Below are positions 9,641 through 59,444 of a stretch of DNA of 64,000 nucleotides, in pieces. Position 1 is the first letter of the stretch. Every line of letters starts with the position of its first letter. A model generated the notes under the pieces. The model did no database searches, had not been told where the DNA came from, and saw only the letters and a list, made by a program, of their open reading frames with translations. Made by a program: the position numbers and the translations under genes. The DNA comes from Rebecca billardiae RCC1528 (taxonomy: Eukaryota > Protista > Haptophyta), in assembly GCA_965240325.2 (NCBI GenBank), contig OZ251228.1, forward strand, positions 806,001-870,000, in the 5' to 3' direction.

Positions 9641-9781
9641 TTGGGCGCGAGGTTTGGTGACGTTTGGGCGATGGCGCCCGATCCGGTCAGAAAACCCGGA
9701 CTTCAAGCACGTGGGCACGCAGGGCGGCACGCCTCTCGGACGCTTGGGCAGGGCTATCGCGCTGCACCCCAGCGCGCGAGC

Positions 9782-23167: not shown

Positions 23168-23665
23168 TCCGAGGGCGCGGCGCGGCGGTCGGGAAGCTTT
23201 TCGGCGGCGGGCGGCGGGGATGGCCCCCGCTCGCCGGGTCTGGGAGGGTTGTGGGGCTGGAGAGCCAGCGAGAGAGGTGGGGACCAGGCCCGGTGCTGGA
23301 TCACTGCGGCCGCGTGACCGCGCGCGCCCCGAGGCCGAGGCCTCGGTGCGCAGGCCGCTACTGCGCCATGCCGGATGGGCCGTGAATCTCATGAACCCGG
23401 AAGTCGACGAGCGCATGCAGCTCTCGAGCCGTGGTCCCGTGGACGGTTTCAAAGGTCAGCCGGCAGCGGATATTTTGGGATCGCTGATAATGTACCACTC
23501 TGATCACGTATTCACGAACACCTTGACGAAATCTGAGGATACGGTTAGTACCCACCTTGTGAAGCCACGCCGACCGAGGGCGCCGCGCCGACCGGTACTG
23601 GCCGGGTTTTCCCGGCTGTTGGCTGCGCCACCCGGGTGTCGGGAGCTGCAGGGCCGCCACGCGCC

Positions 23666-26600
23666 ATGGCACCGGAGCTCGCCGCCCGAGGCCGCGTGCG
23701 CGACGATAAGGCGCGTGCAGGGATCTGCGCGCGCCCCACGGCGCGTGCCGTCCTCCTCGCCCTCGCTGCCTTGCTGCGCCTCCCGGGCGCCGCTGCCGGG
23801 TTTGCCTTCACCAAGGATGAGTTCGCGCTCGTGGCTGACGACCCGATCGTGCTCGCCGACTTTGGCGGCGCCGTCGCTGCGATAGGTGACGTGGATGGGG
23901 ACAGCGTCCAGGACGTCGCCATCGGCTCGCCCGGGAACGACGAGTGCACCATACCGACGGGCGTGAACAACTGCGGCGCGCTCTACGTGCAGCTGCTGAG
24001 CGCTAACGGCACGGTGAAGAGCACGACCAAGATCGGACACTCGATGGGCGGCCTCGGCACGCTCACCAATAACGACAACTTCGGCGAGTCCGTCGTCGGC
24101 CTCGGCAACATCGACGGCGGCTCCCTCGAGTGCATCGCTGTCGGCGCGCCGGCCGATGGCGGGAAGGGAGCCGTCTACATTCTCTGCCTCGCGACCGACG
24201 GCACTGTCTCAAGCAACGCGAAGATCGTCTCGGCGGATCTCACGGACACGGCAGGGCTCTCGAGCGGCGATCGTTTCGGCGTCTCCGTCGGCAACCTCGG
24301 CGACCTCGACGCCAACGGCGTGGTGGACCTCATCGTCGGCGCGGAGGGTGACGCTTCAGGCGGCGCGATGACGGGCGCTGCGTACGTGCTCTTCATGGAG
24401 AGCACGCCCGCCCCCGCCTCCACCTCGGCGCAGGTCAAGATCGCGAGGGTTGGCGGCGCGAGCACGGTGCCCACGCAAGCGGGCGGCCGCTTCGGCGCCG
24501 CCGTCGCCGGCATCGGCGACGTCAACTTCGACGGCGTGCCAGACGCAGCTGTCGGCGCTCCGGACACGGATGCGAGCGCCGGCGCAGTCCACGTCCTGCT
24601 CCTGACCGTGAACGGGACGGTGAGCATGGCCATCAACCACACGGCGAGCAGCGTCGCGCCGGGCATGCCGGCGCTGAGCAGCGGCGACAGGTTCGGCGAG
24701 GACCTCGCAGGGCTCGGAGACTTCGATGGCGACGGCTTTCTCGACATGCTCGTTGGCGCGCCGGGCTCGGTCACCGACCCGGGCAAGGCGTTTGTGATCC
24801 TCGTCGACGGCGTCGGCCAGCCGATCGACCACCTTGAGCTGCCGGAGGCCGCCAGCGGCCTCAGCCTCAGCCTGGACGACCAGTACGGCTACGCGGTCGC
24901 CAGCATGGGCGACTTCGACGGCGATGGCGACACGGACGTGCTCATCGGCGCGCCCGGCGACACCGGCGACATTGGCAAGGCGTACATCACGCTCCTCGGC
25001 CTCACTGCGTCACCTCCTCCGCCGCCGCCCGCGAATCTGGGCGTGGTGGATGCGTTCAAGCTCTCGCTGCTCGAGGGCGGCCTCGACTTCTCGCTCGGCG
25101 CGGACGCGTTTGGCTCGTCTGTTGCAGGCATCGACGACCTGGACGGCGACGGCGCGTTCGACATCGCGGTGGGCGCGTCGCAGGCCAGCACGGGCATGGG
25201 CGCGCTGCACGTGCTCTTCCTGCACGCGAACGCGACGATGAAGGCGTCGAGCCTGATCGACTCCGGCGTGGTCGGTCTGGCCGCGTCGGACGAGTTCGGC
25301 TCGTGCGTGGCGTGCGTGGGCGACGTGAACGGGGACGGCGTGAACGACTTGATCGTGGGCGCCGCTCGCGACTCGTCTCAGGTGAGCGGCGCGGGCGCGC
25401 TGTGGGTGCTGCTGATGGCGTCGGACGGCAGCGTGTCGAACTCGACGAAGATCGCGTCGGATCTGAACGGCGGCCCGACGCTTGCCGTGGACGTCGAGTT
25501 TGGGAGCTCATGTGCCGGCCTCTTTGCTGACCTCGACGCCAACGGCATCGACGACGTGATCGTCGGCTCGCCGCTTTCCGACGACACCGCCGGTTCTGAC
25601 GTCGGCGCGTTTGCGATCCTGTCGTTGGACGCCGCTGGCGCGGCCGTCGCATCGTTGAGCTATGTCGACTCTGCGGAGTCGTACATCTTCTCGCTCGCGG
25701 CGGAGGACCGGTTCGGCAGGAGCGTGTCGGCGTTGGGCGACCTTGACGGCGACGGCGCTGTGGACATTGTCGTCGGCGCGGACGGCGTTGACGACGGCGG
25801 CACGGACGCGGGCGCGTTGTTCGTGGTCTTCCTCGACGGCGTGGGTCTGGTGTTGCGCTCGCTGCGTATCTCGGCGTCGTCCGGTGGGCTGCAGTTCCCG
25901 CTGGGCGCTGGGATGTCGTTCGGCACGTCGGTCGCGTCGATGGGCGACCTGAACCTTGATGGGGTCGTGGACATTGCTGTTGGCGTGCCGGGCGTGGCGG
26001 ACGGCGGCAGCTCCGAGAACGGCGCGGTGCTGATGCTGTACCTCAACGCGAGCGGGTATGCTGTGGACGAGCGCAAGATCTCGCAGACGCACGGCTTGCC
26101 GTTCTCGCTGAACGACGGCGACCGTTTTGGGGAGGCCGTTGCGCACTTCGGCGACCTGTGGTACGACGGCCAGAGCGATCTGCTCGTGGGCGCGCCCGGC
26201 ACGGACGACGACGTGATGGACTCGGGCGCCGCGTACGTGGTCGAGCTCTTCCAGCAGCAGCCGCCCTCACCGCCGCCCTCTCCTGCTCCACCGCCTCCGC
26301 CACCATCGCCGCCGCCGCCGCCGCCCGCGAATCTGGGCGTGGTGGATGCGTTCAAGCTCTCGCTGCTCGAGGGCGGCCTCGACTTCTCGCTCGGCGCGGA
26401 CGCGTTTGGCTCGTCTGTCGCGGGCATCGACGACCTGGACGGCGACGGCGCGTTCGACATCGCGGTGGGCGCGCCGCAGGCCGGCACCGGCATGGGCGCG
26501 CTGCACGTGCTCTTCCTGCACGCGAACGCGACGATGAAGTCGTCGAGCCTGATCGACTCTGGCGTGGTCGGTCTGGCCGCGTCGGACGAGTTCGGCTCGT

Positions 26601-29600
26601 GCGTGGCGTGCGTGGGCGACGTGAACGGGGACGGCGTGAACGACTTGATCGTGGGCGCCGCTCGCGACTCGTCTCAGGTGAGCGGCGCGGGCGCGCTGTG
26701 GGTGCTGCTGATGGCGTCGGACGGCAGCGTGTCGAACTCGACGAAGATCGCGTCGGATCTGAACGGCGGCCCGACGCTTGCCATGGACGTCGAGTTTGGG
26801 AGCTCATGCGCCGGCCTCTTTGCTGACCTGGACGGCAACGGCATCGACGACGTGATCGTCGGCTCGCCGCTTTCGGACGACACCGCCGGTTCTGACGTCG
26901 GCGCGTTTGCGATCCTGTCGTTGGACGCCACGGGCGCGGCCGTCGCATCGTTGAGCTATGTCGACTCTGCGGAGTCGTACATCTTCTCGCTCGCGGCGGA
27001 GGACCGGTTCGGCAGGAGCGTGTCGGCGTTGGGCGACCTTGACGGCGACGGCGCTGTGGACATTGTCGTCGGCGCGGACGGCGTTGACGACGGCGGCGCG
27101 GACGCGGGCGCGTTGTTCGTGGTCTTCCTCGACGGCGTGGGTCTGGTGTTGCGCTCGCTGCGTATCTCGGCGTCGTCCGGTGGGCTGCAGTTCCCGCTGG
27201 GCGCTGGGATGTCGTTCGGCACGTCGGTCGCATCGATGGGCGACCTGAACCTTGATGGGGTCGTGGACATTGCTGTTGGCGTGCCGGGCGTGGCGGACGG
27301 CGGCAGCTCCGAGAACGGCGCGGTGCTGATGCTGTACCTCAACGCGAGCGGGTATGCTGTGGACGAGCGCAAGATCTCGCAGACGCACGGCTTGCCGTTC
27401 TCGCTGAACGACGGCGACCGTTTTGGGGAGGCCGTTGCGCACTTCGGCGACCTGTGGTACGACGGCCAGAGCGATCTGCTTGTGGGCGCGCCCGGCACGG
27501 ACGACGACGTGATGGACTCGGGCGCAGCGTACGTGGTCGAGCTCTTCCAGCAGCAGCCGCCCTCACCGCCGCCCTCTCCTGCTCCACCGCCTCCGCCGCC
27601 ATCGCCGCCGCCGCCGCCGCCCGCGAATCTGGGCGTGGTGGATGCGTTCAAGCTCTCGCTGCTCGAGGGCGGCCTCGACTTCTCGCTCGGCGCGGACGCG
27701 TTTGGCTCGTCTGTCGCGGGCATCGACGACCTGGACGGCGACGGCGCGTTCGACATCGCGGTGGGCGCGCCGCAGGCCGGCACGGGTGCGGGCGCGCTGC
27801 ACGTGCTCTTCCTGCACGCGAACGCGACGATGAAGGCGTCGAGCCTGATCGACTCCGGCGTGGTCGGTCTGGCCGCGTCGGACGAGTTCGGCTCGTGCGT
27901 GGCGTGCGTGGGCGACGTGAACGCGGACGGCGTGAACGACTTGATCGTGGGCGCCGCTCGCGACTCGTCTCAGGTGAGCGGCGCGGGCGCGCTGTGGGTG
28001 CTGCTGATGGCGTCGGACGGCAGCGTGTCGAGCTCGACGAAGATCGCGTCGGATCTGAACGGCGGCCCGACGCTTGCCATGGACGTCGAGTTTGGGAGCT
28101 CATGCGCCGGCCTCTTTGCTGACCTGGACGGCAACGGCATCGACGACGTGATCGTCGGCTCGCCGCTTTCGGACGACACCGCCGGTTCTGACGTCGGCGC
28201 GTTTGCGATCCTGTCGTTGGACGCCACGGGCGCGGCCGTCGCATCGTTGAGCTATGTCGACTCTGCGGAGTCGTACATCTTCTCGCTCGCGGCGGAGGAC
28301 CGGTTCGGCAGGAGCGTGTCGGCGTTGGGCGACCTTGACGGCGACGGCGCTGTGGACATTGTCATCGGCGCGGACGGCGTTGACGACGGCGGCGCGGACG
28401 CGGGCGCGTTGTTCGTGGTCTTCCTCGACGGCGTGGGTCTGGTGTTGCGCTCGCTGCGTATCTCGGCGTCGTCCGGTGGGCTGCAGTTCCCGCTGGGCGC
28501 TGGGATGTCGTTCGGCACGTCGGTCGCATCGATGGGCGACCTGAACCTTGATGGGGTCGTGGACATTGCTGTTGGCGTGCCGGGCGTGGCGGACGGCGGC
28601 AACTCCGAGAACGGCGCCGTGCTGATGCTGTACCTCAACGCGAGCGGGTATGCTGTGGACGAGCGCAAGATCTCGCAGACGCACGGCTTGCCGTTCACGC
28701 TGAACGACGGCGACCGGTTCGGCGACGCCGTTGCGCACTTCGGCGACCTGTGGCACGACGGCCAGAGCGATCTGCTTGTGGGCGCGCCCGGCACGGACGA
28801 CGACGTGATGGACTCGGGCGCCGCGTACGTGGTCGAGCTCTTCCAGCAGCAGCCGCCCTCACCGCCGCCACCGCCGCCCGCCAATCTGGACGTGCTGAAC
28901 GCGTTCAAGTTCTCGCCGCTCGAGGGCGGCCTCGACTTCTCCCTCGGCGCGGACGCGTTTGGCTCGTCTGTCGCGGGCATCGACGACCTGGACGGCGACG
29001 GCGCGTTCGACATTGCGGTGGGCGCGCCGCAGGCCGGCACCGGCATGGGCGCGCTCCACGTGCTCTTCCTGCACGCGAACGCGACGATGAAGTCGTCGAG
29101 CCTGATCGACTCCGGCGTGGTCGGTCTGGCCGCGTCGGACGAGTTCGGCTCGTGCGTGGCGTGCGTGGGCGACGTGAACGGGGACGGCGTGAACGACTTG
29201 ATCGTGGGCGCCGCTCGCGACTCGTCTCAGGTGAGCGGCGCGGGCGCGCTGTGGGTGCTGCTGATGGCGTCGGACGGCAGCGTGTCGAGCTCGACGAAGA
29301 TCGCGTCGGATCTGAACGGCGGCCCGACGCTTGCCGTGGACGTCGAGTTTGGGAGCTCATGTGCCGGCCTCTTCTCGGACCTCGACGGCAACGGCATCGA
29401 CGACGTGATCGTCGGCTCGCCGCTTTCCGACGACACCGCCGGTTCTGACGTCGGCGCGTTTGCGATCCTGTCGTTGGACGCCACGGGCGCGGCCGTCGCA
29501 TCGTTGAGCTATGTCGACTCTGCGGAGTCGTACATCTTCTCGCTCGCGGCGGAGGACCGGTTCGGCAGGAGCGTGTCGGCGTTGGGCGACCTTGACGGCG

Positions 29601-32600
29601 ACGGCGCTGTGGACATTGTCGTCGGCGCGGACGGCGTTGACGACGGCGGCGCGGACGCGGGCGCGTTGTTCGTGGTCTTCCTCGACGGCGTGGGTCTGGT
29701 GTTGCGCTCGCTGCGTATCTCGGCGTCGTCCGGTGGGCTGCAGTTCCCGCTGGGCGCTGGGATGTCGTTCGGCACGTCGGTCGCATCGATGGGCGACCTG
29801 AACCTTGATGGGGTCGTGGACATTGCTGTTGGCGTGCCGGGCGTGGCGGACGGCGGCAGCTCCGAGAACGGCGCGGTGCTGATGCTGTACCTCAACGCGA
29901 GCGGGCACGTGCTAGACGAGCGCAAGATCTCGCAGACGCATGGCTTGCCGTTCTCGCTGAACGACGGCGACCGGTTCGGCGACGCCGTTGCGCACTTCGG
30001 CGACCTGTGGCACGACGGCCAGAGCGATCTGCTCGTGGGCGCGCCCGGCACGGACGACGACGTGATGGACTCAGGCGCCGCGTACGTGGTCGAGCTCTTC
30101 CAGCAGCAGCCGCCCTCACCGCCGCCCTCTCCTGCTCCACCGCCTCCGCCGCCATCGCCGCCGCCGCCGCCGCCCGCGAATCTGGGCGTGGTGGATGCGT
30201 TCAAGCTCTCGCTGCTCGAGGGCGGCCTCGACTTCTCGCTCGGCGCGGACGCGTTTGGCTCGTCTGTCGCGGGCATCGACGACCTGGACGGCGACGGCGC
30301 GTTCGACATCGCGGTGGGCGCGCCGCAGGCCGGCACCGGCATGGGCGCGCTGCACGTGCTCTTCCTGCACGCGAACGCGACGATGAAGGCGTCGAGCCTG
30401 ATCGACTCCGGCGTGGTCGGTCTGGCCGCGTCGGACGAGTTCGGCTCGTGCGTGGCGTGCGTGGGCGACGTGAACGCGGACGGCGTGAACGACTTGATCG
30501 TGGGCGCCGCTCGCGACTCGTCTCAGGTGAGCGGCGCGGGCGCGCTGTGGGTGCTGCTGATGGCGTCGGACGGCAGCGTGTCGAGCTCGACGAAGATCGC
30601 GTCGGATCTGAACGGCGGCCCGACGCTTGCCATGGACGTCGAGTTTGGGAGCTCATGCGCCGGCCTCTTTGCTGACCTGGACGGCAACGGCATCGACGAC
30701 GTGATCGTCGGCTCGCCGCTTTCGGACGACACCGCCGGTTCTGACGTCGGCGCGTTTGCGATCCTGTCGTTGGACGCCACGGGCGCGGCCGTCGCATCGT
30801 TGAGCTATGTCGACTCTGCGGAGTCGTACATCTTCTCGCTCGCGGCGGAGGACCGGTTCGGCAGGAGCGTGTCGGCGTTGGGCGACCTTGACGGCGACGG
30901 CGCTGTGGACATTGTCGTCGGCGCGGACGGCGTTGACGACGGCGGCGCGGACGCGGGCGCGTTGTTCGTGGTCTTCCTCGACGGCGTGGGTCTGGTGTTG
31001 CGCTCGCTGCGTATCTCGGCGTCGTCCGGTGGGCTGCAGTTCCCGCTGGGCGCTGGGATGTCGTTCGGCACGTCGGTCGCATCGATGGGCGACCTGAACC
31101 TTGATGGGGTCGTGGACATTGCTGTTGGCGTGCCGGGCGTGGCGGACGGCGGCAACTCCGAGAACGGCGCCGTGCTGATGCTGTACCTCAACGCGAGCGG
31201 GTATGCTGTGGACGAGCGCAAGATCTCGCAGACGCACGGCTTGCCGTTCACGCTGAACGACGGCGACCGGTTCGGCGACGCCGTTGCGCACTTCGGCGAC
31301 CTGTGGCACGACGGCCAGAGCGATCTGCTTGTGGGCGCGCCCGGCACGGACGACGACGTGATGGACTCGGGCGCAGCGTACGTGGTCGAGCTCTTCCAGC
31401 AGCAGCCGCCGTCACCTCCACCTTCCCCTGCACCTCCACCGCCGCCACCGACTACGTTTGGGGTTCCAGGCTCGGCGAAGATCTCCTTAACCGAGGGTGG
31501 CCTGCCATTCGGCCTTGGCCCGTCGTTTAACTTTGGCGCAGCCGTCGCTGGCGTTGGTGACGTCGACTCCGATGGTTACGTGGAGGTCGCTGTCGGCATC
31601 CCTGGCCGTTCGGCTGGCCGTGGAGCGGTGGGGATCCTCTCCTTGTACGCGAACGCGACCGTCAGGACGGCAAAAATCGTCACCGGGGGTGCTGGCATGA
31701 ATTTCACGCTCTCTCCCGGCGACAACTTCGGCTATGCAATTGGTGTCGGCGATGCCGACTCGAATGGCTTCCCCGACCTCGCCATCGGCGCCCCGTACGA
31801 CAGCACTCTCGTGTCCGCTGGAGGCGCCGTGTACTTCATGGCCCTGAGCGGCAGCGGCGTGAGCGGGATCTTCAAGGTCGCGTCGGGCCTCAACGGGGGC
31901 CCGGCGCTGGATGCAGATGACAACTTTGGAGCCGCCGTCGCGTCCATGGAGCAGGACACCGACTCGAACGGTCTGCTGGATGTCATTGTCGGTGCGCCAG
32001 GAGACGACGACGGCGGCACGGACTACGGGGCAGCGTACTTCCTCTCTTTCAACAACGTCGGGACCATCGTCAACACCGTGAAGGTCTCCGCGCTCACCAC
32101 GAACGCGCCACCCCTCGGCTTCCAGCACTTGTTCGGCTCTGCAGTGGCAGCTGTTGGTGACCTCGACGCCGATGGCGATGTCGACGTCGCCGTCGGAGCG
32201 CCGGGCGATGACGTGGACGGGCTCGATGATTCAGGCGCGTTGTACATCCTCTTTCTCGGGGCCGACGCCCAGCCCACTGGCTACCAGAAGATCTCGCAGC
32301 TCGACGGCAACCTGACCGGCTTTGGTGGGCCATTGCACGAGAATTCGAAATTTGGCCGCTCTGTCGCGCCGCTTGGCGACCTCAATGCCGATGGTGTTCC
32401 TGACATTGCTGTCGGCGCGCCCGGTGACAGCGACGGGGGAGGTGGCGGCAATGGCGCTGTCTTCATCCTCTTCCTAGCGCCCAGCGGAAGCGTCGTGCAG
32501 GCGCGCAAGATCTCGTCGACGTACAGCCAGTTTGGCGCCGCGCTGGCCGATATGGACTTGTTTGGCATCGCCGTGGCATTGATCGGCGACTTGGATGGTG

Positions 32601-47600: not shown

Positions 47601-50600
47601 ACCCGGACCTGCACCTGTGTTTCACGCACGCGGACGAGCCCGTGCGCTCGTACGGCGCGGCGATCACGCTGGTCGTGGCGCAGGTGCAGGGCCCGGCGTT
47701 CACCGTCGCGGTGGCGGGCGTGGAGGAGGCGCTGCCGTTCGAGGGCGTCGGCCTCGCGGCGGGCGACCAGGCGTACTGGGTCGAGGACGCGTCCGCGTGC
47801 CCGCCGGCGGGCGGCGGCGCGCTCGACGAGTACGGCGGCGTGTTCAACACGACCGGCCTCGGCGTGGGCGCCTTCACGCCGCTCGCGCCCAGGGCCGGCC
47901 TCTCGCTGTGCCACCGCTTCGCGGCCGAGCCGTGGGCGCACTACGCGGGCGTGACGCTCGACGTCTACCAGCTCGACGCGCTCGGCGGCGGCAGCCGCGC
48001 CGTGGTGGGCGAGCCGCACGCCGTCACCTTCTCGGGGTTTGGCGTGGCGGACGGCGACGCCGCGTACTGGGTGCCCGCGGGCACGGCCTCGTGCGCGGAC
48101 GAGCCGCCGCTCGTGCAGTGGGGCGGGCAGAAGACGCTGAGTGCGGGCCTTGGCGCGAGCTACACCTTCCTGCGCAAGTTTGGCGGCCTCGGCTACTCGA
48201 TCTGCTACCGCTTCCGCGCCGAGCCGTTCGCGCTGTACGCCAGCCTGCAGCTGGACGTGCTCGAGGTGAGCGGGCCGTTTGTCGTGCTCGCAGTCGTCAC
48301 GCTCGAGCGCACCTTCGCCTTCCAGGGCGTGGGCGTCGGCGCGGGGGACGAGGCGTACTTCGTGCCCGCGGCCGCGACGGCGTGCGACGAGGCGGCGAGC
48401 GTGAGCGGCGCCGCGGCCGTCGTCGCCGCCGACCGCACCGCCTCGTTCACGTTTGGCGCGGTCGCGACGGGCCACCGATTGTGTTACCGCTTTGGCGGCG
48501 CGTCGGGCGGCCTGCCGTGGCGCCGCTTCGCCGGCGTCACGCTCTCGGTCACCGTGCCCGGCGACCCGTTCGCACTCGCCAACTTCGATTCGCTCTCGCC
48601 GACGGGCGCGACGCTCACCAACAGCGGCATCGCCACCGACGTCACCATCGTCGGCACGCAGTTCGACCTGGGCGCGCAGAGCAAGGCGGACATCATCTAC
48701 TGCGTGTTCGACGGCACGCGCGTGCTCGTCAGCTCGATCACGCCCACCGAGATCTCGTGCACCGCGCCCGCCGCGAGCGTCGCGGGCGAGGTGACGCTCT
48801 CGCTCGTCGCGGACGAGGACGACGAGGACGGCGAGCCGCGCGAGCCCATCGCCATCACCAACGAGTTCGCCTACTTCGACATGGCGGGCGTGACGGTGGG
48901 CGCGCTCGCGCCGCCGGGCGCGCCGCAGGGCACGGCCGACGTCGAGGTCGCGGTCTCCGGCGCCAACTTCGCGGACTACGGCGAGCTGCGCTGCGCGTTC
49001 ATCGGGCCCAATTTTGCCGGCGGCCGCGTCGAGGTGGCGGCGACGCTGCCCGACGCGGGCACGTCCGAGCTGCTCTGCACCGCGCCGTACGTGTCGCCCA
49101 CCGTGAGCGCGGGCGCGATCGTGGTCGAGGTGTCGCTCAACGGCCAGGCCTTCAGCACCTCCGGCGCGCAGTTTACGCTGTACACCGCGCTCGTCGAGTC
49201 GGGCGAGCCGCAGGGCGCGCCGGTCGACGGCGGCGACGGCACGCGCCGGCGCGCGCTCGCGGGCTCCACCGCGATCACGCTCAGCGGCTCGGGCTTCGTC
49301 GACCTCGGCGCGGGCGCGCCGCTCTGCTTCTTTGTCGGCGCGGCCGGCGGCGGCGCGGTCTTCCAGGCGCCCGCCACCGTGGTCGACGCGGCGACGGCGG
49401 AGTGCGACACGCCGGTGGGCGCGGGCGCGGGCGAGTACACCGTCTCGCTCTCGCTCAACGGCGGCGTGCACCTCGCGCCGCTCTTCTTCGACCAGATCGG
49501 CTTCGAGCTGTACGACGCCTCGAACGTGGGCGTGACGGCGCTCGTGCCGCCCGGCGGGCCGGTGGCGGGCGGCACGCGCGTCACCGTGTTCGGCACGGGC
49601 TTCAAGGAGTACGGCGACGGCGCGAGCGAGGCGACCAAGCTACTGTGCTGCGTGCTCGACCGCGCGGGCGAGTGCGCCGTCAAGGCGACGCTCCTCGCGC
49701 CCGCGGCCAACGGGCAGGATCGCGCGCTGTGCACGATGCCCGCGGTCGACGTGTCGGGCAACCGCACGCTCGACGTCTCGCTCGGCGGCGGCAGCCTCGC
49801 GTCCACCACCGACGCGGGGCGGCCCTTCGTGTACTACGACGAGCCGAGCGTGCTCGAGGTCAGCCCGGCCGAGGGCGACGCGCTCGGCGGCACGCGCACC
49901 ACCATCATCGGCTCGGGCTTCGCCGCGCTCGCCGACGCGGCGCTGGGGTACGGCGCGGAGCCGGCCTCCTTCTTGCGCGTGCGGTTCGGGCCGACGACCG
50001 CCGCGCCGCCGCTCGAGTTCAGCGACACGCGCATCGTGCAGGTGGCGAGCTGGGGCGCGGAGGGCGGCGCGGCGGTGCGCGTCGCGCTCAACGGGCGGCA
50101 GTTCGCCCCCGCCGCCGCGGCCGACGCCGGCTCCTTCACCTTCGTCGGGCTGCACGCGCCCGAGATTGTATCTGCCGCGTTCAACGACGAGGCGACCGCG
50201 CTGATCGTGCAGCTCGACGACCAGCCGACCAACCGCGGCGGGATGGCGGGCTCGGGGCCGTGCGCGCGCGTGCTCGACGACGCGACGGTCGCGGCGATCC
50301 GCGGCGGCTTCAACGCCGCGCCGTCGTGCTACTGGGCCGACGACAGCACGCTGATCGCCGAGCTCAACTACCTGACGGCGCTGGGCCCGGGCTCGAGCGT
50401 GGCGCTGCGCGAGAACACGATCTGGCCCAAGGCGTTTGGCGGCAGCTGCCCGGACGAGGTGTGCGCGAGCTCGAGCGCGACGATCGACGCGGACTTCCCG
50501 TGCGTGGGCGCGTGCCCGGTGCCGGTGGCCGCGCTCAACGGGCCGACGCAGATCTCGTCGTGCCCGGGCGAGGTGCTCGTGCTCGACGCGAGCGGCTCGT

Positions 50601-53600
50601 CCGGCGGCGGCATCAAGGACCTCACGTACACGTGGCGCGTCGACCCGAGCGTCTCCGACTTTGCGGCGCAGATCAACGCGCGCCTCTCGGACGCGGCGAC
50701 GTACCCGCCCTCAACGGCGGTGCTCTCGATCGACGGGCTGCAGGGCACGAGCTTCGTCTTCCTGCTGCGCGTCTCCTCCTTCCTCGGCCGCACGTCCACG
50801 CTCGTGCGCTGGGCGGTCACGCGCGCGGGCGGCGCGACGCCCTCGCTCTCGATCGACGGGCCGTTCGAGCTGACCGCGCGGCCGGCGTCGAGCGTGCTGC
50901 TCAAGGGCGTGGCGGCGCTCGCCGACTGCTGGCCGGCGGACGACCCGGCGCAGATCGACTTCGCGTGGTCGGTCACGGGGATCGCCGACGCGACGGGCGC
51001 GGACGCCATCGCCACCGCCTCGCTCGCGCTCGCCGAGCCGAACAAGGCGTCGCTGCTCATCCCGGCCTTCACGCTCGTGCCCGATCTGTCGTACACGCTC
51101 GCGCTCTCGGCGGCGATGGCCGTCGACCCGACGTCGACGACGAGCGCGACCGTGCGGCTGGTGGTGGTGGCGCAGGCGCTGCAGGCGATCATCTCGGGCG
51201 GCGACCGGCGCGTGAGCACGACGGCCGACCTCGAGGTCGACGCCTCCTCCTCGTACGACCCGAACGTGCTCGACTCCGCCGCCGACACGACGCTCGAGTT
51301 TGCGTGGTCGGTCGCGCGCCAGACCAACGCGACGCACAGCGTCGCCACGTCCTTCGACGCGAGCGTCGCCGTGGACGGGTCGGTGCTCAGCGTGCCCGAG
51401 GCGGTGCAGCTGGTCGAGGGCAACTACACGATCAGCCTCACGCTCTCCAAGCCCGGCCTCGCCGACGCCACCGCCTCCATCTTTGTCGAGGTCGTGAACG
51501 GCGCCGTGCCGGTGATCACGTTTGCGCCGCTCACCGCGCTCAAGTACAACCCGACCTGGTCGCTGCCCACGCAGCGCGTCTCGCTCTCGACGACGCTGGA
51601 CGCGGTGTCGGTGGCGCGCGAGGAGGCGGGGCTCGACGCGTACGCGTACGCGTGGAGCGCGCGCGTCGACGTCGCCGGCGAGCTGCTCGACGCGGGCCTC
51701 GACCTCGCGGACACGGCGCGCGTGACGACGACGGGCGCGGACGGTCCGTCGCTCGCGTTCCGCTCGGGCGTGCTCACGCCCGGCGCGCTGTACGTGTTCG
51801 GGCTGGAGGTGTTCGGCGGCTCGCAGCCGGCGTTCGCGTCGGTGAGCGTGCAGATCAACCGCCCGCCGTACGGCGGCGACCTCGCCGTCTCGCCCATGGC
51901 CGGCGGCGTCGAGCTCGACACGAGCTTTGCGCTGCGCGCGAACGGCTGGACGGACGACCCGGAAGACACGCCGCTCGAGTATGGCTACTCGTACCTGCCG
52001 AGCGGCGCCGCGGCGGCGCAGTCGCTCGGCCAGCGCGTCAGGTCGAAGACGGCGAGCGCGTTCCTCCCCGCGGGCAACCTCACCGTCGCCGTCGCCGTCT
52101 TCGACTTCTACGGCGCGTCCGCCACCACGTCCGTGCCGGGCGTGCTCGTCGAGGCGGCCGGCTCGCTCGACTGCTCGGCGATCGCGGCCGCGCTCGATGC
52201 GGCCAGCACCGCCGCCGAGACGGGCTCGGGCTCGTCGGCGATGCAGCTGCTGCTCGCGCTCTCGAGCGCGGCGGGCGGGGTGACCGGCGTGTCCGAGTGC
52301 GACGGCACGAGCGGCCGCCGCCGCCGCCGCCTCGCCGACGACAACTCGACGGCGGCCGGCTCGTCTGCCGTCTCGACGCAGATGCTCGGCACGGCGAGCG
52401 CGGTCGCGACCGGCTCGGTCGCCACGTCCGACGCGCTGCAGCAGACCGCGTCGGTGGTGAGCTCGATCACGAGCGCGGCGGGCGACTCGCTCGACGAGAG
52501 CGGGCAGACCCTCGCCATCTCCACCGTCGCCGACGCCGCCGGCAGCGCCTCGTCCGAGGGCGGCTCGGACGCGTTCGTGAGCAACGTGGTCGGCACGATG
52601 AACAGCGTGCTGCAGTCGGCGGACGCGACGGCGAGCCGCCGCCGCCGGCTCGCCGAGGCGGGCAACGAGACGAACTGCACGGCGTCGGCGCTCGCGGCGA
52701 TCAACGCGGCGACGAAGCGCGCGGCCGACGCGGTCGCGTCGACGATGACCGCGGGCGGCGTCCCCGGCGAGCCCGGCACCGACGCGAGCACGCCCAAGGT
52801 GAACATCAGCGCGGTCGTCGCGACCAAGGGCGCGCTCACCAACGGCACGCTCGCCGGCCCCGGCGGGCAGGGCGCGCTCGACATCCAGCCGTCGGCGCTG
52901 GGCAACGCGACGGGCGGCGGCGTGGTGCTGCACTCGTCCATCATCGCCGACAACATCTACGCCGACCTCGGCTGCCCCGAGCCGAACGGCACGAACGCGT
53001 CGGACGGCTCGGACGGGCGGCGGCGCGCGCGCCGCCGGCTGCAGTCGGGCGACTCGGCGACCGGCACGCTGCAGACCGGCGTCTTCTCGGTCTCGCTCAA
53101 GGCGACGGACGGCGTCGAGCTCTCGATCAGCAACCTGGACGAGCCGATCGTGATCGCGATCCCGCTCAACCCGCCCGCCGACCCCGTCGTCGGCGCGTCG
53201 GGCACGTGCGCCGAGTTCGAGTCGTGCAACGCGGCGCGCGGCCGGGGCGCGTGCGAGGGCGGCGCGTGCCGCTGCGTCTCGCCCTACATGGGCGCGGCGT
53301 GCGCGGAGGAGGCGCAGTGCTTCTACTGGGACGAGACGCTGGCCGAGTGGACGCAGGACGGGTGCACGCGCATCCCCACGCCCGCGGGCGCCGACCCGTC
53401 CCTGCTCTACTGCAGCTGCACGCACCTCACCGACTTTGGCGGCGTCGCGGTCGACGTGCCCACCTCGACCGACGACATCGCCGAGGACGCGTCCGGCGTG
53501 AACGTCAACACCTTCTCGGCGGACGACGCGAAGAACGCGCTGGTGGTCTCGTCGCCGGAGCAGCTCGCCGAGCGCATCTCGAACAACCCGTACATCTTCG

Positions 53601-54626
53601 GCCTCGTCCTCGGCATGGCGGGCGGGTGCGCCGCCTCGCTGCTGCTCTTCTGCTGGAAGGACCGCACCGAGACGGAGGGGCGGCGCGCCAAGCGGATCGC
53701 CGCCGAGGAGAAGAAGCGCAAGAAGGCGGAGGCGCGCGCGCAGGCGCTCGAGGCGAGGCTGGACAAGATGGACGACGCGATCGCCGACCAGACCGAGAAG
53801 GCCGCGCTCGCCATCCAGGCCGTGATGCGCGGCAAGGCCGCGCGCAAGGAGGTGAAGGAGGCGCACTCGCTCTTCAAGCGCGGCGACCGCAACAAGGACC
53901 ACTCGTTCACGCGGCTGTACCGCATGATGGTGGGCGCGCTCGAGTCCGAGCACACGCTGCTCGGGCTGTGGTTCGGCGACCCCGAGACGGCCAAGCGCGC
54001 CGAGCTGTGCCAGTGCTTCTGGAACGTGTGCATGCTCGGCCTCGTCATCGAGTGCATGCTGTACGACACGTCGCCCTCGTCGGACGACGGCGGCTCGTCG
54101 GGCGCGGCGATCTCGTTCAATCTCGTGCAGATGGTGATCTTCGCCTCGATCACCGCGGGGCTCTCGCTGCCCGCGCTCGCGCTGTTCAAGATGATCTTCA
54201 CGCTCGGGTACGGCCGCGACACGCCGGTCGCGCAGCGCATCTTCAAGAACCTCGTCGACCCGAACGAGTCGGAGGACAAGATGATGGTGAGACACCGCGC
54301 CAAGCCGCCCACGCCCGCGCCCTCGCCCTCGCCCGCCAAGGCGGCGCAGCTGTGGCCCGAGCCGCCGAGCGCGGGGAGCGAGGACGGCGAGAGCGCGGGC
54401 GGCACGCGCACGAAGCGCGCGTCCAAGCTCCGCACGAGCAGCTCCGACCGCTCGCGCTTCGACGACACCGTCCGGCCCGTCACCACGCCCGCGGCGGACA
54501 GCGGGCGCGGCGCGCGCGCCATCGCCGCGCTGCAGGCCGGCGCCTCGGACGCTCGCGGCGGCGGCTCCCAGGGTGTGCGCGCGTGCGCGAGGCTGAAGAG
54601 CGGCAGCGACGCGAGCGCGGTGACGC

Positions 54627-54667
<41 letters not shown>

Positions 54668-56114
54668 GAGGCGGGTGCGCCGACCGGCAGTGGCCCCGCC
54701 GTGCGCACCGTCGCAAGGCTGCAGAGCAGCAGCGGCTCGAGTGCCGTGTCGCGCGCCGTGTCGCCGCCGCCCTCGCCGCCCGCGCCACCCGAGGCGGCGG
54801 CGCCGGCAAAACCGCCGCCGCCGCCGGCCGCCGCCCCAGCCGACGAGCCCACGCCGGCTACGATGCCACTGGCGGCCGTGCGGAGCACGCCCGCGCGCCC
54901 GGTCTCCGGCTCGGCCAGCACCCGCAGGGTCTTGAGCTCGCGCGTCGGCCTGCCACCCATGCCGTCCACTGCCGACGGCTCACGCACGCTCCCTGGCAAC
55001 GCCCCCGCCGGCGGCAGCTCCGGCGCCGGGAGCGGCCTGCCCCCACGCCCGCCGGCGGGAGAGCCGCGGCAGGGCGGTGTGCCACCGCCGCCGCGCGAGC
55101 AGAAGCGCGCGCTCAAGACCCCGCCGCCGCCGCCGCCGCCACCGGACACGGCCGGCGGCATCGCCCCCGCGCCCAGCGCCGCGGCGCCCGTCGCTGACGC
55201 GCCGGCGCAGTCGAAGACCCTCAAGCGCGTCGGATCGCTCAGCGTCAACGTGCAGCACTCGCTCTCCGAGGCGGTGGTGCGGCTGCTGCGCGCCAAGTTC
55301 AACAAGTTCGACGCGGACGGCAGCGGCCACATGGACGTGGGCGAGCTGCGCACGCTGCTCAACGAGATCGGCTTCAAGATGTCGCGCCGCCGCGTGCAGA
55401 AGCTCGCAAACACGCTCGACAAGGACCAGAACGCCGAGATCTCCTTCACCGAGCTGATCGCGTGGTACGACACGATGACGCAGGTGCGCGCGCGGCCCAG
55501 AGCGCGCGCGCGCCCCCACGCGGCACGCGGCGCTGCTCGCCCCCCTCACGCCGCGCGCGCCCCGGCGCGATGGCGCGCCCCGACCCCGCAGGAGGCGGCC
55601 GCGCGCGACGAGCGGCGCAAGCACGGCTGGCGCAAGCACGCCGCGGCGGTGCAGCGCGCGCTCACGCCGCACCCGTACGTGCGCATCGCGCTCGCGTGGT
55701 GCGCCATCTGGGCGATCTTCATCGCGATGGCGATGATCGCCATCACCTTCTCGGTCACGTTCGGGAACAACACGACGCGCGAGCTGCTCGTCAGCTGGAG
55801 CTTTGCTGAGGTGCAGACGCTCTCCGTCGAGGTGCGCGCGCCGCGCCAACGCGCGGGCCATCGCCCCGCAGGCCAGCCAGCCTCCCGGCCGCGCCGCCGC
55901 ACGCGCGACGACTCACCCGTGCGCTGTCACGGCCGCGTGCCGCCCACCTGCGCACCCGTCGCAGGAACCCATCATGATCGCCCTGAGCGCGGCGATGCCG
56001 TGGGTGATCGACCGCCTCACGTCCAACGAGGTGATGGCCGAGATCATCAACGACATCCTCGGATCGACTGTGGGGGCAGCCATCTCCGGTCTCAAAACCA
56101 TCTTCACGGGATGA
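23666..56114 (+). CDS. Giant (~10,735 aa) polycystin-1/REJ-GPS-like cell-surface protein; predicted exons 23666-55483, 55592-55831, 55965-56114
   Basis: Uninterrupted 32-kb ORF. Signal-like AVLLALAALLRLPGAAAG, FG-GAP repeats, SPn rod, IPT/TIG, REJ-type NRPPYGG..VSP..G..L.T.F..A.GW.DD, GPS CFYWD..W..DGC..CSCTHLTDF, TM helices, IQ and EF-hands. Two GTGCGC...CGCAG introns near the end give the C-terminus EPIMIAL...KTIFTG*. Confidence 0.9.
23810..32695 (+). other. Seven FG-GAP (integrin-alpha-type) beta-propeller modules within the giant CDS
   Basis: Recurrent FG-x-S/A-V...GD-x-D/N-GDG-x-x-D-I/L-x-VGAP blades, about 7 per ~420-aa module. Modules are separated by short poly-Pro linkers. Confidence 0.88.
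25031..31405 (+). repeat. Five near-identical tandem coding repeats of 1296 bp (432 aa; one unit 1257 bp)
   Basis: Unit starts at 25031, 26327, 27623, 28880 and 30176 (gcgaatctgggcgtggtgg / gccaatctggacgtg). Confidence 0.95.
32696..43000 (+). repeat. 10.3-kb coding repeat: extensin/HRGP-like Ser-Pro3/Ser-Pro4 rod (~3,435 aa)
   Basis: Translation is SPPPP(SPPP)4 units (21 aa / 63 bp), a central pure (SPPP)n block and a degenerate C-terminal part. Confidence 0.96.
43650..48560 (+). repeat. Seventeen diverged ~96-aa two-Cys beta-rich repeats within the giant CDS
   Basis: Consensus AVVG..E...F.G.G...GD.A.WV.....C......YGG........A.FT......L.LC(Y/F).F..EP(F/W)..Y....L, counted 17 times by the C(Y/F/H) motif. 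Confidence 0.85.
48580..53440 (+). other. About 5 IPT/TIG domains, PKD/REJ region, EGF-like module and GPS motif within the giant CDS
   Basis: P..GP..GGTRVTVFGTGF and VEVSLNGQ.F (IPT); LDASGS, AIISGGDR..VDASSSYDP, NRPPYGG (REJ); C..RGACEGGACRCVSPYMGAAC (EGF); CFYWD...CSCTHLTDF at 53318-53437 (GPS). Confidence 0.8.
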
Positions 56115-56214
56115 GCACCGCCCCGCACTACTGTACCTTACAGTTTGCCGTAAGTATTTAGCTAACTAGCTAGTAGCTACTACAGACATGACGACGGTAC
56201 TTACATTATTATAT

Positions 56215-57867
56215 GTGGCGTTATAGGGAACCTATAACTGAGTGTCTATGAGCGACGCCAAGAATCCGGCTCGCACGGCATTCCTGCGTTGTCCTGTGCG
56301 CACCGCCGCGCGCAGGAGTCCTGGTGCGCTGCCAATCTGGCCCACAGCGGCGCACCTGCAGGACTCGGTTGGTTACCGCTCACATCGGATCGATCAGGCT
56401 TCGCTCTCGGGGGCGCCATGGGGCTGCTCACGACGAAGGCGCCGAGCTGGGCAAGGGAATCGCCTGCATCGGGCACTGCCGGGTGCACGCTCCGCTGCAG
56501 GAGGTGCACCGCAGTCGCCGCAGCCCCTCTGCTCGGTAAGGTCGCTGGCTGTCTGTGTGGCCCGGCTCCCCGCCTGATCGTTCGGCGGCGCGACGTCATC
56601 ATCTGTCTTCGCCGCGTCGCCCCTCATGCAATGGTCTCTTGCTCTCGCCGCTGTCGCGTCAACCCGCACGCTTCATCGTTTGAGATACGCGCTCGCCTCG
56701 CGCCCGTGCGTCGCGCGGGTGCGGCGCACTCTGACGCGTGTCTGCTCGCCGCGCGTCGCGATCGATCGTGCGCGCGCGGCCGCGCAGTCCTCGTCTCTTC
56801 TATTTCTAAACGGGATTCATCAACGACTACTTGGACGCCCGCTCCAACTTATAAACGGGACTCGCGGGCGCCCTCTCGACCTCGGGCAGCAGCTCAACCG
56901 CCACGCCGCTGCCAGCGCCCGCCGTCGTTCGTTGCTCAAATCCCAACATAGCTAACCTGATCGTTCCATGATTGATCATTGTGGTCTGTCTACTCCACGA
57001 CGCCGCGCGCCGCGACCATCCAGCTCCAGAGTCCATTCGTACCCGACGCCTTGTACGAGCCGGGCATGGCGGAGTGGCTAGACGTGGCGTTATAGGGAAC
57101 CTATAACTGAGTGTCTATGAGCGACGCCAAGAATCCGGCTCGCACGGCATTCCTGCGTTGTCCTGTGCGCACCGCCGCGCGCAGGAGTCCTGGTGCGCTG
57201 CCAATCTGGCCCACAGCGGCGCACCTGCAGGACTCGGTTGGTTACCGCTCACATCGGATCGATCAGGCTTCGCTCTCGGGGGCGCCATGGGGCTGCTCAC
57301 GACGAAGGCGCCGAGCTGGGCAAGGGAATCGCCTGCATCGGGCACTGCCGGGTGCACGCTCCGCTGCAGGAGGTGCACCGCAGTCGCCGCAGCCCCTCTG
57401 CTCGGTAAGGTCGCTGGCTGTCTGTGTGGCCCGGCTCCCCGCCTGATCGTTCGGCGGCGCGACGTCATCATCTGTCTTCGCCGCGTCGCCCCTCATGCAA
57501 TGGTCTCTTGCTCTCGCCGCTGTCGCGTCAACCCGCACGCTTCATCGTTTGCCCGCCCGCCCACCCTCGGCCTCTGGCGGATATGGAAGCACTGCAGTGT
57601 CAGCGAGCCATCAGCCTTAATCGACCTTGCTCAGTGACTGACGACTCGCGGGCGCCCTCTCGACCTCGGGCAGCAGCTCAACCGCCACGCCGCTGCCAGC
57701 GCCCGCCGTCGTTCGTTGCTCAAATCCCAACATAGCTAACCTGATCGTTCCATGATTGATCATTGTGGTCTGTCTACTCCACGACGCCGCGCGCCGCGAC
57801 CATCCAGCTCCAGAGTCCATTCGTACCCGACGCCTTGTACGAGCCGGGCATGGCGGAGTGGCTAGAC
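56215..57867. repeat. Head-to-tail tandem pair of a non-coding element (56215-57083, 869 bp; 57084-57867, 784 bp)
   Basis: Both copies begin gtggcgttatagggaacctataactgag and end ggagtggctagac. They match except for one internal segment. The pair is flanked by ATAT on both sides. Confidence 0.92.
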
Positions 57868-59310: not shown

Positions 59311-59444
59311 TCTTCTGTCGGCGGAGGCGCTACGACGAGGCGGCGTCGAGTCGGCCGCACGGGCGCGCGAAGCCTGATGAAGCGCGCCGAAAAACGGGCG
59401 GCGACTCGGCGAGCTTTTTCTTTCTTTTCCGACCACAGGCCAGG

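What the first reader, a model, noticed from the sequence alone, without database searches (positions are those of the whole stretch)
23666..56114. A ~1-MDa polycystin-1-like receptor: integrin-type propeller head on a micron-scale proline stalk, with built-in Ca2+ sensing
Seen, N to C: signal peptide; 7 FG-GAP propellers; ~3,435-aa SP3/4 rod; SEA-like module; 17 x 96-aa repeats; ~5 IPT/TIG; REJ; EGF; GPS; TM1; IQ; TM2-3; Pro-rich loop; 2 EF-hands; TM4-5. Known: REJ + GPS + multi-TM is the polycystin-1 layout, FG-GAP propellers are Ca2+-binding adhesion heads, and SPn tracts are hydroxylated and glycosylated rods in algae and plants. Chlamydomonas mastigonemes are built around a giant hydroxyproline-rich protein with a PKD2-like membrane domain. 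Inference: a single-chain tethered adhesion or mechanosensory antenna (for example a flagellar hair, haptonema or surface filament) coupled to Ca2+/calmodulin signalling. I know of no described protein with this combination.
Basis: partly seen in the sequence, partly recalled or inferred. Interest (0 to 1): 0.92.

Follow-up and report, generated by a model that had tools for sequence, protein, structure and literature searches.

The report
Giant stalked channel-less polycystin-1-like receptor
A pavlovophyte alga encodes a 10,735-residue (1.06 MDa) surface protein: seven integrin-like calcium-binding heads on a roughly one-micrometre proline-serine rod, anchored by the self-cleaving front half of a polycystin-1-type receptor with calcium-sensor motifs and no ion-channel half. 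No paper found describes this layout.

Summary
One open frame of 10,841 codons (23636-56161) runs through all the listed domains. The gene model is ATG 23666 to TGA 56114 with two small 3' introns, one hidden in frame, giving 10,735 aa.

Pfam confirms FG-GAP, TIG, REJ, GPS and an EF-hand pair. The 3,435-aa rod is coding in the same frame as head and base: its third codon positions vary and Ser uses both codon families. The 96-aa repeats fold as Ig-like domains.

A model of the five-helix base, built on a homologue, matches TM1-TM5 of human polycystin-1 (Z 17.9). PLAT and the channel half are absent. SEA is unconfirmed, and the IQ motif falls just below Pfam's cutoff.

The gene belongs to a family whose named members are all pavlovophytes. 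This scan had already noted several paralogues elsewhere in this genome. The one public gene model I examined (Diacronema lutheri KAG8459354.1) leaves out the signal peptide and rod.

Function is inferred: a tethered adhesion or mechanosensory antenna with a cleavable GAIN joint and cytosolic Ca2+ modules. A passive hair or coat anchor is the main rival. No RNA runs were available.

The parts
23666..55483 (+). Exon 1 (31,818 nt, aa 1-10606)
   Evidence: Uninterrupted frame. The ATG follows a stop at 23633-23635. No convincing hidden intron was found elsewhere.
55484..55591 (+). Intron A, 108 nt, in frame and stop-free (GTGCGC...CGCAG)
   Evidence: Read. Homologues P0001 and P0002 lack these 36 residues.
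55592..55831 (+). Exon 2 (aa 10607-10686)
55832..55964 (+). Intron B, 133 nt (GTGCGC...CGCAG), shifts the frame
   Evidence: Exon 3 continues the alignment with the homologues' C-termini.
55965..56114 (+). Exon 3 with TGA stop (aa 10687-10735)
   Evidence: Homologues end at the same place.
23666..23809 (+). Signal-peptide-like N-terminus (hydrophobic core aa 26-44)
   Evidence: Hydropathy scan. The D. lutheri paralogue also starts with a signal peptide.
23798..25033 (+). FG-GAP head module 1 (about 35% identical to the others)
25034..31456 (+). FG-GAP head modules 2-6, a recent five-fold tandem amplification (94-98.5% nt identity)
31457..32695 (+). FG-GAP head module 7
   Evidence: Matches the Ca2+-binding blades of integrin alpha-5, E 8.4e-12.
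32696..43000 (+). Ser-Pro3/4 rod, 3,435 aa, about 1.0-1.07 micrometre if a PPII helix
   Evidence: Composition and motif census. Codon test: Ser uses AGY 498 times and TCN 227 times; third positions vary while positions 1 and 2 are fixed.
43001..43363 (+). Small alpha/beta ('SEA-like') module plus a conserved Cys motif (GCTDxxAxNYD...C)
   Evidence: Conserved after the rod in L002 and L003. The SEA assignment is unconfirmed.
43364..43690 (+). Second Pro-rich linker (about 110 aa)
43733..48556 (+). 17 Ig-like repeats of about 96 aa, each with a conserved Cys pair and Trp
   Evidence: AF2 model of a repeat pair has pLDDT 93.7. Foldseek finds tandem Ig domains such as CD4 D1D2. Atlas gives a TIG-like lead.
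48563..50155 (+). About 5 IPT/TIG domains
   Evidence: Pfam TIG E 5e-22, two stretches reported. Five units were counted by eye in the translation; a regex count returned nothing.
50945..52132 (+). REJ domain (Pfam range)
   Evidence: PF02010, E 4.9e-42, profile positions 11-407 of 452.
52133..53443 (+). GAIN-like region with an EGF-like insert (53207-53302) and the GPS motif; predicted cleavage HL|T at 53426-53431
   Evidence: PF01825 at 26.9 bits, above the 22.5 cutoff. H-L-T is kept in 36, 37 and 36 of the 38 aligned family members.
53588..53659 (+). TM1
53810..53848 (+). IQ-like motif (IQxxxRGxxxR) in the cytosolic TM1-TM2 loop
   Evidence: Pfam IQ E 0.0015, 18.6 bits, below the 20.3 cutoff.
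54005..54199 (+). TM2 (54005-54061) and TM3 (54122-54199)
54200..55285 (+). Long Pro/Ala/Ser-rich cytosolic loop, predicted disordered
   Evidence: pLDDT below 50 in the homologue's loop.
55286..55468 (+). EF-hand pair (loops DADGSGHMDVGE and DKDQNAEISFTE)
   Evidence: PF13499 E 1.2e-13 on the segment alone. The fold matches a calmodulin lobe.
55673..56009 (+). TM4 (55673-55762) and TM5 (55790-55831 plus 55965-56009, split by intron B) with the near-invariant E-P pair

Best explanation
This is one gene for a 10,735-aa membrane glycoprotein.

Proposed mechanism:
- A signal peptide sends the N-terminus outside the cell.
- Seven Ca2+-binding FG-GAP (integrin-alpha-type) modules form a multivalent adhesive tip.
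- A 3,435-aa Ser-Pro3/4 tract, most likely hydroxylated and O-glycosylated into a stiff PPII rod of about 1 micrometre, holds the tip away from the cell.
- 17 Ig-like and about 5 TIG domains plus a REJ module form the stem.
- A GAIN/GPS joint with an intact HL|T site connects the roughly 9,870-aa ectodomain to an 814-aa membrane fragment.
- That fragment is the polycystin-1 N-terminal five-helix domain (TM1-TM5). It carries an IQ-like helix where polycystin-1 has PLAT, an EF-hand pair in the TM3-TM4 cytosolic loop, and no channel half.

I propose that pull or ligand binding at the tip is passed down the rod to the GAIN joint and the five-helix bundle. The cytosolic IQ and EF-hand modules would couple this to Ca2+/calmodulin, probably together with a separate channel.

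Shown: the gene model, the domain order, the folds and the topology logic. Inferred: glycosylation, cleavage, location, and any signalling.
For: - One frame carries all parts. The rod shows codon periodicity in that same frame.
- The introns and the C-terminus are supported by homologues.
- Rod-to-base continuity is conserved in another species (L002). In D. lutheri, a signal peptide, a roughly 1,880-aa rod and the base lie in one 5,921-codon frame (L003).
- Pfam finds FG-GAP, TIG, REJ, GPS and EF-hand. The heads match integrin Ca2+ blades, with 35 DxDxDGxxD-type loops.
- The 96-aa repeats have an Ig-like fold.
- The base model matches polycystin-1 residues 3063-3610 with Z 17.9 and rmsd 2.7 A over 194 residues. 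PKD1L2 is the top Swiss-Prot AFDB hit, spanning GPS to TM5.
- H-L-T is conserved in 36-37 of 38 relatives.
- The base, with TM4-5 at the extreme C-terminus, recurs in more than 50 proteins. EF-hand or IQ motifs recur in relatives.
- A family member is present in an MMETSP transcriptome.
- Precedents for HRGP rods on membrane anchors: MST3 (PMC11015965) and the cane-shaped sexual agglutinins (PMC2113723).
Against: - There is no RNA, proteomic or localisation evidence for this gene; no sequencing runs were listed.
- The base fold was modelled on a metagenomic homologue (P0006, 36-47% identical), not on this protein.
- No sequence-level hit to polycystin-1 TM helices was found. Foldseek against the PDB saw only the EF-hand.
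- The protein has no recognisable output enzyme or channel, so signalling needs an unknown partner.
- The IQ motif is below Pfam's threshold.
- The five near-identical head modules could in principle be miscounted by assembly.
Confidence: 0.55

Rival explanations
1. It is a passive structural fibril. The protein would be the core or tether of a flagellar hair, haptonemal or body-surface coat filament. The polycystin-type base would serve only as a membrane anchor, with no signalling role.
For: - Chlamydomonas MST3 shows that PPII filaments spanning hundreds of nm can be tethered by a polycystin-type membrane domain.
- The family has variable or absent heads; the D. lutheri paralogue L003 is headless.
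- No catalytic output domain was found.
Against: - The GPS HL|T site, the EF-hand pair and the E-P pair in TM5 are conserved across diverged relatives. That is more than an anchor needs.
- Multivalent Ca2+-binding integrin-type heads suggest ligand binding.
Confidence: 0.25
2. It is a cell-cell recognition adhesin, for example a gamete agglutinin or a prey or partner capture molecule. Head binding would trigger a Ca2+ response, by analogy with Chlamydomonas sexual agglutinins and the sea-urchin sperm REJ receptors.
For: - The head-shaft-membrane layout resembles the agglutinin canes, whose heads point outward (PMC2113723).
- The REJ/GPS module is present.
- The recent five-fold head amplification with mosaic variants fits fast-evolving recognition genes.
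Against: There are no expression or life-cycle data. I know of no described sexual cycle in pavlovophytes (my own knowledge, not checked). Many paralogues with different heads argue for broader roles (scan notes, untested here).
Confidence: 0.12
3. It is an artefact. The long frame would join two or more genes, or a mis-assembled repeat; stops are rare in 70-85% GC DNA, so the frame could stay open by chance.
For: Other frames of the rod are also nearly stop-free. Tandem copies that are 94-98.5% identical, and a 10-kb low-complexity tract, are hard to assemble.
Against: - The head frame has no stop before the rod, and the rod shows codon-position constraint in that same frame.
- The base resumes in the same frame.
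- Independent assemblies of relatives show the rod running in frame into the same modules.
- The repeat copies differ by scattered substitutions, not by collapse.
Confidence: 0.05

Closest known systems
Polycystin-1 / PKD1-like / sea-urchin REJ proteins
   Same: The same order of REJ, then GAIN/GPS (HL|T), then TM1-TM5. The TM1-2 and TM3-4 loops are cytosolic. There is a long Ig-like repeat array in the ectodomain. The five-helix bundle superposes on human PC1 3063-3610.
   Different: No PLAT, no C-terminal 6-TM channel-like or TOP domain, and no PKD (PF00801), LRR, WSC or C-type lectin modules. An IQ-like helix and an EF-hand pair sit in the cytosolic loops. A 1-micrometre Ser-Pro rod and FG-GAP heads have been added.
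Chlamydomonas mastigoneme protein MST3 (PMC11015965)
   Same: A giant hydroxyproline-rich PPII filament protein whose C-terminus is a polycystin-family membrane domain, with its N-terminus at the distal tip.
   Different: MST3's anchor is an incomplete PKD2-like channel subunit completed by SIP. Here the anchor is the polycystin-1 TM1-5 module behind a REJ/GAIN joint. The heads are FG-GAP modules, and no MST1-like sheath partner is known.
Chlamydomonas sexual agglutinins and other HRGPs
   Same: A globular head on a long Ser-Pro(n) shaft that projects from the membrane. SP3/SP4 motifs.
   Different: This protein is itself a 5-TM membrane protein with GAIN, EF-hand and IQ modules. It is also about three times longer than the agglutinins as I recall their size, which I did not check.
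Integrin alpha subunits
   Same: FG-GAP repeats with DxDxDGxxD Ca2+ loops. The best PDB sequence hits are blades 5-7 of integrin alpha-5, alpha-4, alpha-V and alpha-IIb.
   Different: Seven modules in tandem, each with six repeats rather than one seven-bladed propeller. No thigh or calf legs and no evidence of a beta subunit.
Adhesion GPCRs
   Same: A large adhesive ectodomain joined to the membrane part through a GAIN/GPS autoproteolysis site. A tethered-agonist logic is plausible.
   Different: Five helices with the polycystin-1 fold, not a 7-TM GPCR.

Membership tests
Polycystin-1 / PKD1-like family | REJ domain | tested here: met
   PF02010, E 4.9e-42, 144.5 bits against a cutoff of 25.
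Polycystin-1 / PKD1-like family | GAIN/GPS autoproteolysis motif (HL|T) just before TM1 | tested here: met
   PF01825, 26.9 bits against 22.5. The sequence CSCTHL|TDFGG is present, and H-L-T is conserved in 36-37 of 38 relatives. Actual cleavage cannot be tested here.
Polycystin-1 / PKD1-like family | N-terminal five-helix membrane domain (TM1-TM5) fold | tested here: met
   The AF2 model of the family base (homologue P0006 with a 42-sequence alignment) matches 8z6b_A residues 3063-3610 with Z 17.9 and rmsd 2.7 A over 194 aa. PKD1L2 1281-1879 is the top AFDB Swiss-Prot hit. This was done on a proxy, and there was no sequence-level hit.
Polycystin-1 / PKD1-like family | PLAT domain in the TM1-TM2 loop | tested here: not met
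   No PLAT hit. The loop is a coiled-coil/IQ-like helix.
Polycystin-1 / PKD1-like family | C-terminal 6-TM polycystin channel-like domain with TOP domain (11 TM in all) | tested here: not met
   No PF08016 hit. The protein ends 34 aa after TM5, as its homologues do. Nothing coding was seen downstream.
Adhesion GPCR | 7-TM secretin-like domain after GAIN | tested here: not met
   Five helices with the polycystin-1 fold.
Integrin alpha-type FG-GAP propeller | FG-GAP repeats with Ca2+-binding DxDxDGxxD loops | tested here: met
   PF01839, E 4.6e-171, 29 stretches. 35 Ca2+-loop motifs. Integrin alpha-5 E 8.4e-12.
Integrin alpha-type FG-GAP propeller | Seven blades closing one propeller | tested here: inconclusive
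   Six evenly spaced repeats (about 68 aa each) per 406-432-aa module.
Hydroxyproline-rich glycoproteins (extensin / algal HRGP type) | Ser-Pro(3-4) repeats | tested here: met
   SPPP x576 and SPPPP x136 in 3,435 aa.
Hydroxyproline-rich glycoproteins (extensin / algal HRGP type) | Prolyl hydroxylation and O-glycosylation | not testable with these tools
   Needs biochemistry or mass spectrometry.
MST3-type mastigoneme core | PKD2-like (channel-type) membrane domain completed by SIP | tested here: not met
   The base matches PC1 TM1-5, not a PKD2 voltage-sensor/pore fold.
SEA domain | SEA fold or profile match | tested here: inconclusive
   No Pfam hit at E up to 1. Atlas score for SEA clusters is only 0.68.
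IQ calmodulin-binding motif | Profile match above threshold | tested here: inconclusive
   18.6 bits against a cutoff of 20.3, E 0.0015. The consensus IQxxxRGxxxR is present. There is a weak hit to the Sp17 IQ motif.

The most novel reading that the evidence does not exclude
The REJ-GAIN-5TM unit may be an autonomous, ancient sensor module. It would be the free-standing counterpart of the front half of polycystin-1, working without its own channel half. In pavlovophytes it would be mounted on micrometre-long glycosylated rods to form the cell's flagellar or surface hairs. Each hair would then be a single-molecule mechanosensor or adhesion sensor. Its GAIN joint and tethered stalk would switch the five-helix bundle, and it would talk to separate TRPP-type channels through Ca2+, its EF-hands and calmodulin.
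Probability: 0.15. Interest if true: 0.85.

Novelty: new variant of a known kind. Interest (0 to 1): 0.66.

Why it matters
- If the model is right, this is one of the largest single-chain receptors predicted in any protist, by my own estimate.
- It shows that the REJ-GAIN-TM1-5 half of polycystin-1 exists and diversifies without the channel half. That bears on how polycystin-1 arose and on what its poorly understood N-terminal membrane domain does.
- It parallels the Chlamydomonas mastigoneme solution (a PPII filament on a polycystin-family anchor) in an unrelated algal lineage, but uses the other half of the polycystin system.
- The one public gene model I inspected in its DNA (D. lutheri KAG8459354.1) omits the signal peptide and rod. 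Other public or called models start inside or after the rod, or are cut by gaps and contig ends, so comparative surveys probably undercount the family.
- It gives concrete candidates for the unknown proteins of haptophyte flagellar hairs or surface coats.

Tried and rejected
- Sequencing runs: two look-ups (5.5 kb and 1 kb) listed none, so read laying was never used.
- Giant relatives in the protein database: the search for 5,500-17,500-aa proteins found none. The search for 2,400-7,700-aa proteins found only P0008. The word filter clearly misses known relatives such as P0153.
- The CCMP2436 locus L001: an assembly gap lies just upstream of the gene, so it says nothing about head or rod.
- Foldseek of the base model against the PDB, and the atlas shape search, both returned only EF-hand matches.
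- The family profile against PDB sequences was swamped by calmodulin. The small GPS-TM3 profile gave no polycystin hit.
- A scan of exon 1 for hidden in-frame introns found only candidates that would cut through well-aligned domains, plus one ambiguous site in the disordered loop.
- Neighbouring ORFs (myosin, NIPA, RPS3Ae, an NAD-binding protein) show no functional link.
- Literature searches for polycystin or REJ in haptophytes or protists found no description of the family. One of them was badly framed and uninformative.
- The spliced protein itself could not be submitted for folding, because it has no single reference. A homologue was used instead.

Full report
**Observation**

The window holds one open frame of 10,841 codons, 23636-56161 on the + strand. 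Its last 700 nt contain two short introns with the same ends (GTGCGC...CGCAG). Intron A, 55484-55591, is 108 nt, in frame and stop-free, so it hides inside the ORF. Intron B, 55832-55964, is 133 nt and shifts the frame. The true last exon runs 55965-56114 and ends in TGA.

Homologues from Pavlovales sp. CCMP2436 (P0001, P0002) lack the 36 residues of intron A. They also continue through the exon-3 sequence to a C-terminus at the same place. The spliced product is 10,735 aa and 1.06 MDa.

**Domains, N to C**

- N-terminus: a hydrophobic, signal-peptide-like stretch.
- Heads: seven FG-GAP modules separated by six Pro-rich linkers. Pfam FG-GAP scores E 4.6e-171 with 29 stretches. There are 35 DxDxDGxxD-type Ca2+ loops. 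The best PDB sequence matches are the Ca2+-binding blades of integrin alpha-5, alpha-4, alpha-V and alpha-IIb (E down to 8.4e-12). Each module has six evenly spaced repeats, not seven. Modules 2-6 are 94-98.5% identical in DNA, which marks a recent amplification.
- Rod: exactly 3,435 aa, 75.6% Pro and 21.1% Ser, with SPPP x576 and SPPPP x136.
- Spacer: a small alpha/beta module with a conserved Cys motif, then a second Pro-rich linker. The SEA label could not be confirmed.
- Stem: 17 repeats of about 96 aa, each with a Cys pair. An AF2 model of two repeats (pLDDT 93.7) is a tandem Ig-like sandwich. About five TIG domains follow; they were counted by eye in the translation, a regex count returned nothing, and Pfam reports two stretches at E 5e-22.
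- Membrane-proximal part: REJ (E 4.9e-42), an EGF-like insert, and GPS (26.9 bits against a cutoff of 22.5) with the canonical CxCxHL|TxF site.
- Membrane part: five hydrophobic helices. An IQxxxRGxxxR motif follows TM1 (18.6 bits, just under Pfam's 20.3). A canonical EF-hand pair precedes TM4 (E 1.2e-13). No PLAT or polycystin-channel profile is hit.

**Is it one gene?**

High GC makes stops rare, so an open frame in the rod proves little by itself. Two other rod frames are also nearly stop-free. Four independent observations support a single gene.

- The rod shows strong codon-position structure in the frame of head and base. Positions 1 and 2 are almost fixed. Position 3 is mixed (A 23%, C 19%, G 52%, T 6.5%). 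Ser is written with both AGY (498) and TCN (227) codons. This is selection on the protein, not a simple DNA repeat.
- The head frame has no stop before the rod, and the stem resumes in the same frame.
- In a Logan contig from another species (L002, 66% GC), a Pro/Ser rod runs in frame, from the contig edge, into the same spacer module, Ig-like repeats, TIG, REJ, GPS and base.
- In Diacronema lutheri (L003, GCA_019448385.1), a 5,921-codon frame starts with a signal peptide, continues with about 1,880 aa of SPPP rod, and then has the same stem and base. The public model KAG8459354.1 begins only after the rod.

A scan of exon 1 for further in-frame introns found nothing convincing. No public sequencing run could be listed, so there is no direct RNA evidence for this gene. 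One family member, P0020, comes from an MMETSP transcriptome.

**The membrane base**

A profile of GPS-TM1-IQ-TM2-TM3 found 239 proteins at E up to 1e-3 among 1.84 billion representatives. In more than 50 of them the TM4-TM5 module sits at the extreme C-terminus. The near-invariant residues include a GPS-region Cys and an E-P pair in TM5, and H-L-T at the GPS site is kept in 36-37 of 38 members. All named members are pavlovophytes: D. lutheri and Pavlovales sp. CCMP2436.

The spliced protein has no single reference, so I modelled the closest complete homologue instead. This was P0006:330-1230, 36-47% identical to this protein, with a 42-sequence alignment. The helices have pLDDT above 90 and the loops are disordered.

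An exhaustive structural comparison put human polycystin-1 first: 8z6b_A, Z 17.9, rmsd 2.7 A over 194 residues, chain residues 3063-3610. By established knowledge that range is TM1 to TM5, the 'five additional helices' of PKD1 mentioned in PMC11015965. All other rows were EF-hand matches with Z of 12 or less. Foldseek against Swiss-Prot AlphaFold models independently ranked PKD1L2 residues 1281-1879 first.

Foldseek against the PDB saw only the calmodulin-like lobe, and sequence profiles did not reach polycystin-1 helices. The homology of the helices therefore rests on fold plus the adjacent REJ/GPS sequence homology.

The topology follows polycystin-1. TM1 runs from outside to inside. The TM1-2 loop is cytosolic, with the IQ-like helix in place of PLAT. 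The TM3-4 loop is cytosolic, long and disordered, and carries the EF-hand pair. The C-terminus is cytosolic.

**Mechanism**

The shown parts fit a tethered adhesion or mechanosensory antenna.

- A PPII helix at 0.29-0.31 nm per residue makes the rod 1.0-1.07 micrometres long. With stem and heads the reach would be about 1.2 micrometres.
- SP3/SP4 tracts are the substrates for hydroxylation and arabinosyl/galactosyl decoration in algal HRGPs. They form filaments hundreds of nm long in the Chlamydomonas mastigoneme.
- Cleavage at HL|T would leave a roughly 9,870-aa ectodomain held non-covalently on an 814-aa membrane fragment. This is the arrangement that, in adhesion GPCRs and polycystin-1, lets force expose a tethered stalk (established knowledge).
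- The EF-hand pair and IQ-like helix put Ca2+ and calmodulin sensing on the cytosolic face.
- No channel or enzyme is present, so any output needs a partner. Other notes of this scan report TRPP-type channels elsewhere in the genome; I did not test this.

I rate this reading 0.55. The main rival, a passive hair or coat fibril whose base is only an anchor, gets 0.25. A cell-cell agglutinin role gets 0.12. An assembly or annotation artefact gets about 0.05.

**Comparison and membership**

The protein works like a hybrid of three known things:
- polycystin-1/REJ receptors (stem, joint and base);
- algal HRGP filaments such as MST3 and the sexual agglutinins (rod, with the head pointing outward);
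- integrin alpha heads.

It is not a full member of the polycystin-1 family, because PLAT and the 6-TM channel-like half were tested for and are absent. It is not an adhesion GPCR, because it has five helices. It is not MST3-like in its anchor, which is PC1 TM1-5 and not a PKD2-like domain.

Searches of the paper library found no description of such proteins in haptophytes or protists.

This scan had already flagged paralogues of the same family on other DNA of this genome. They carry LRR, FG-GAP or other heads. I did not examine them. This gene adds a member with seven FG-GAP modules and a complete, homologue-supported 3' end.

**Verdict**

I class it as a new variant of a known kind.

Noticed in passing
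L003:4051-21813 (D. lutheri GCA_019448385.1, JAGTXO010000041.1): The public gene model KAG8459354.1 (3,751 aa) starts after the rod. The open frame has 5,921 codons and begins with a signal peptide followed by about 1,880 aa of SPPP repeats. It is a headless paralogue or relative of this family, and the public annotation leaves out its front part.
   Followed up: partly
window 55484-55591: A 108-nt intron that is a multiple of three and stop-free. It reads through as 36 Arg/Ala/Pro-rich residues inside the ORF. Such hidden introns may inflate other long ORFs in this GC-rich genome.
   Followed up: yes
window 23798-32695: Each FG-GAP head module has six evenly spaced repeats of about 68 aa, rather than the seven blades of integrin propellers. 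Whether they close as six-bladed rings was not modelled.
   Followed up: partly
window 43289-43363; also L002 and L003: A short conserved Cys motif (GCTDxxAxNYDxxAT...C.Y) follows the alpha/beta spacer module in all three species. It has no Pfam match.
   Followed up: no
window 56210-57867: Two pairs of near-identical direct repeats lie just 3' of the gene: 300 nt at 56210 and 57079, and 225 nt at 56859 and 57643. This looks like a tandemly duplicated unit of about 0.8 kb in a lower-GC stretch.
   Followed up: partly
window 18871-21963 (+): A myosin motor-domain gene (PF00063, E 4e-177) lies directly upstream on the same strand. The 1.7 kb between it and the giant gene's ATG gave no Pfam hit. 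No link to the receptor was found.
   Followed up: partly
window 9290-10828 (+), 11310-13013 (-), 58405-59547 (-): Ordinary neighbours: ribosomal protein S3Ae, a NIPA-type Mg transporter, and an NAD(P)-binding NmrA/epimerase-like protein.
   Followed up: no
relatives P0042, P0046, P0065, P0079, P0122: Some family members have TM3-TM4 cytosolic loops of more than 1,000 aa that carry EF-hand, IQ, GYF-like or weak PDZ-like matches. The cytosolic loop seems to be the variable signalling platform of the family.
   Followed up: partly
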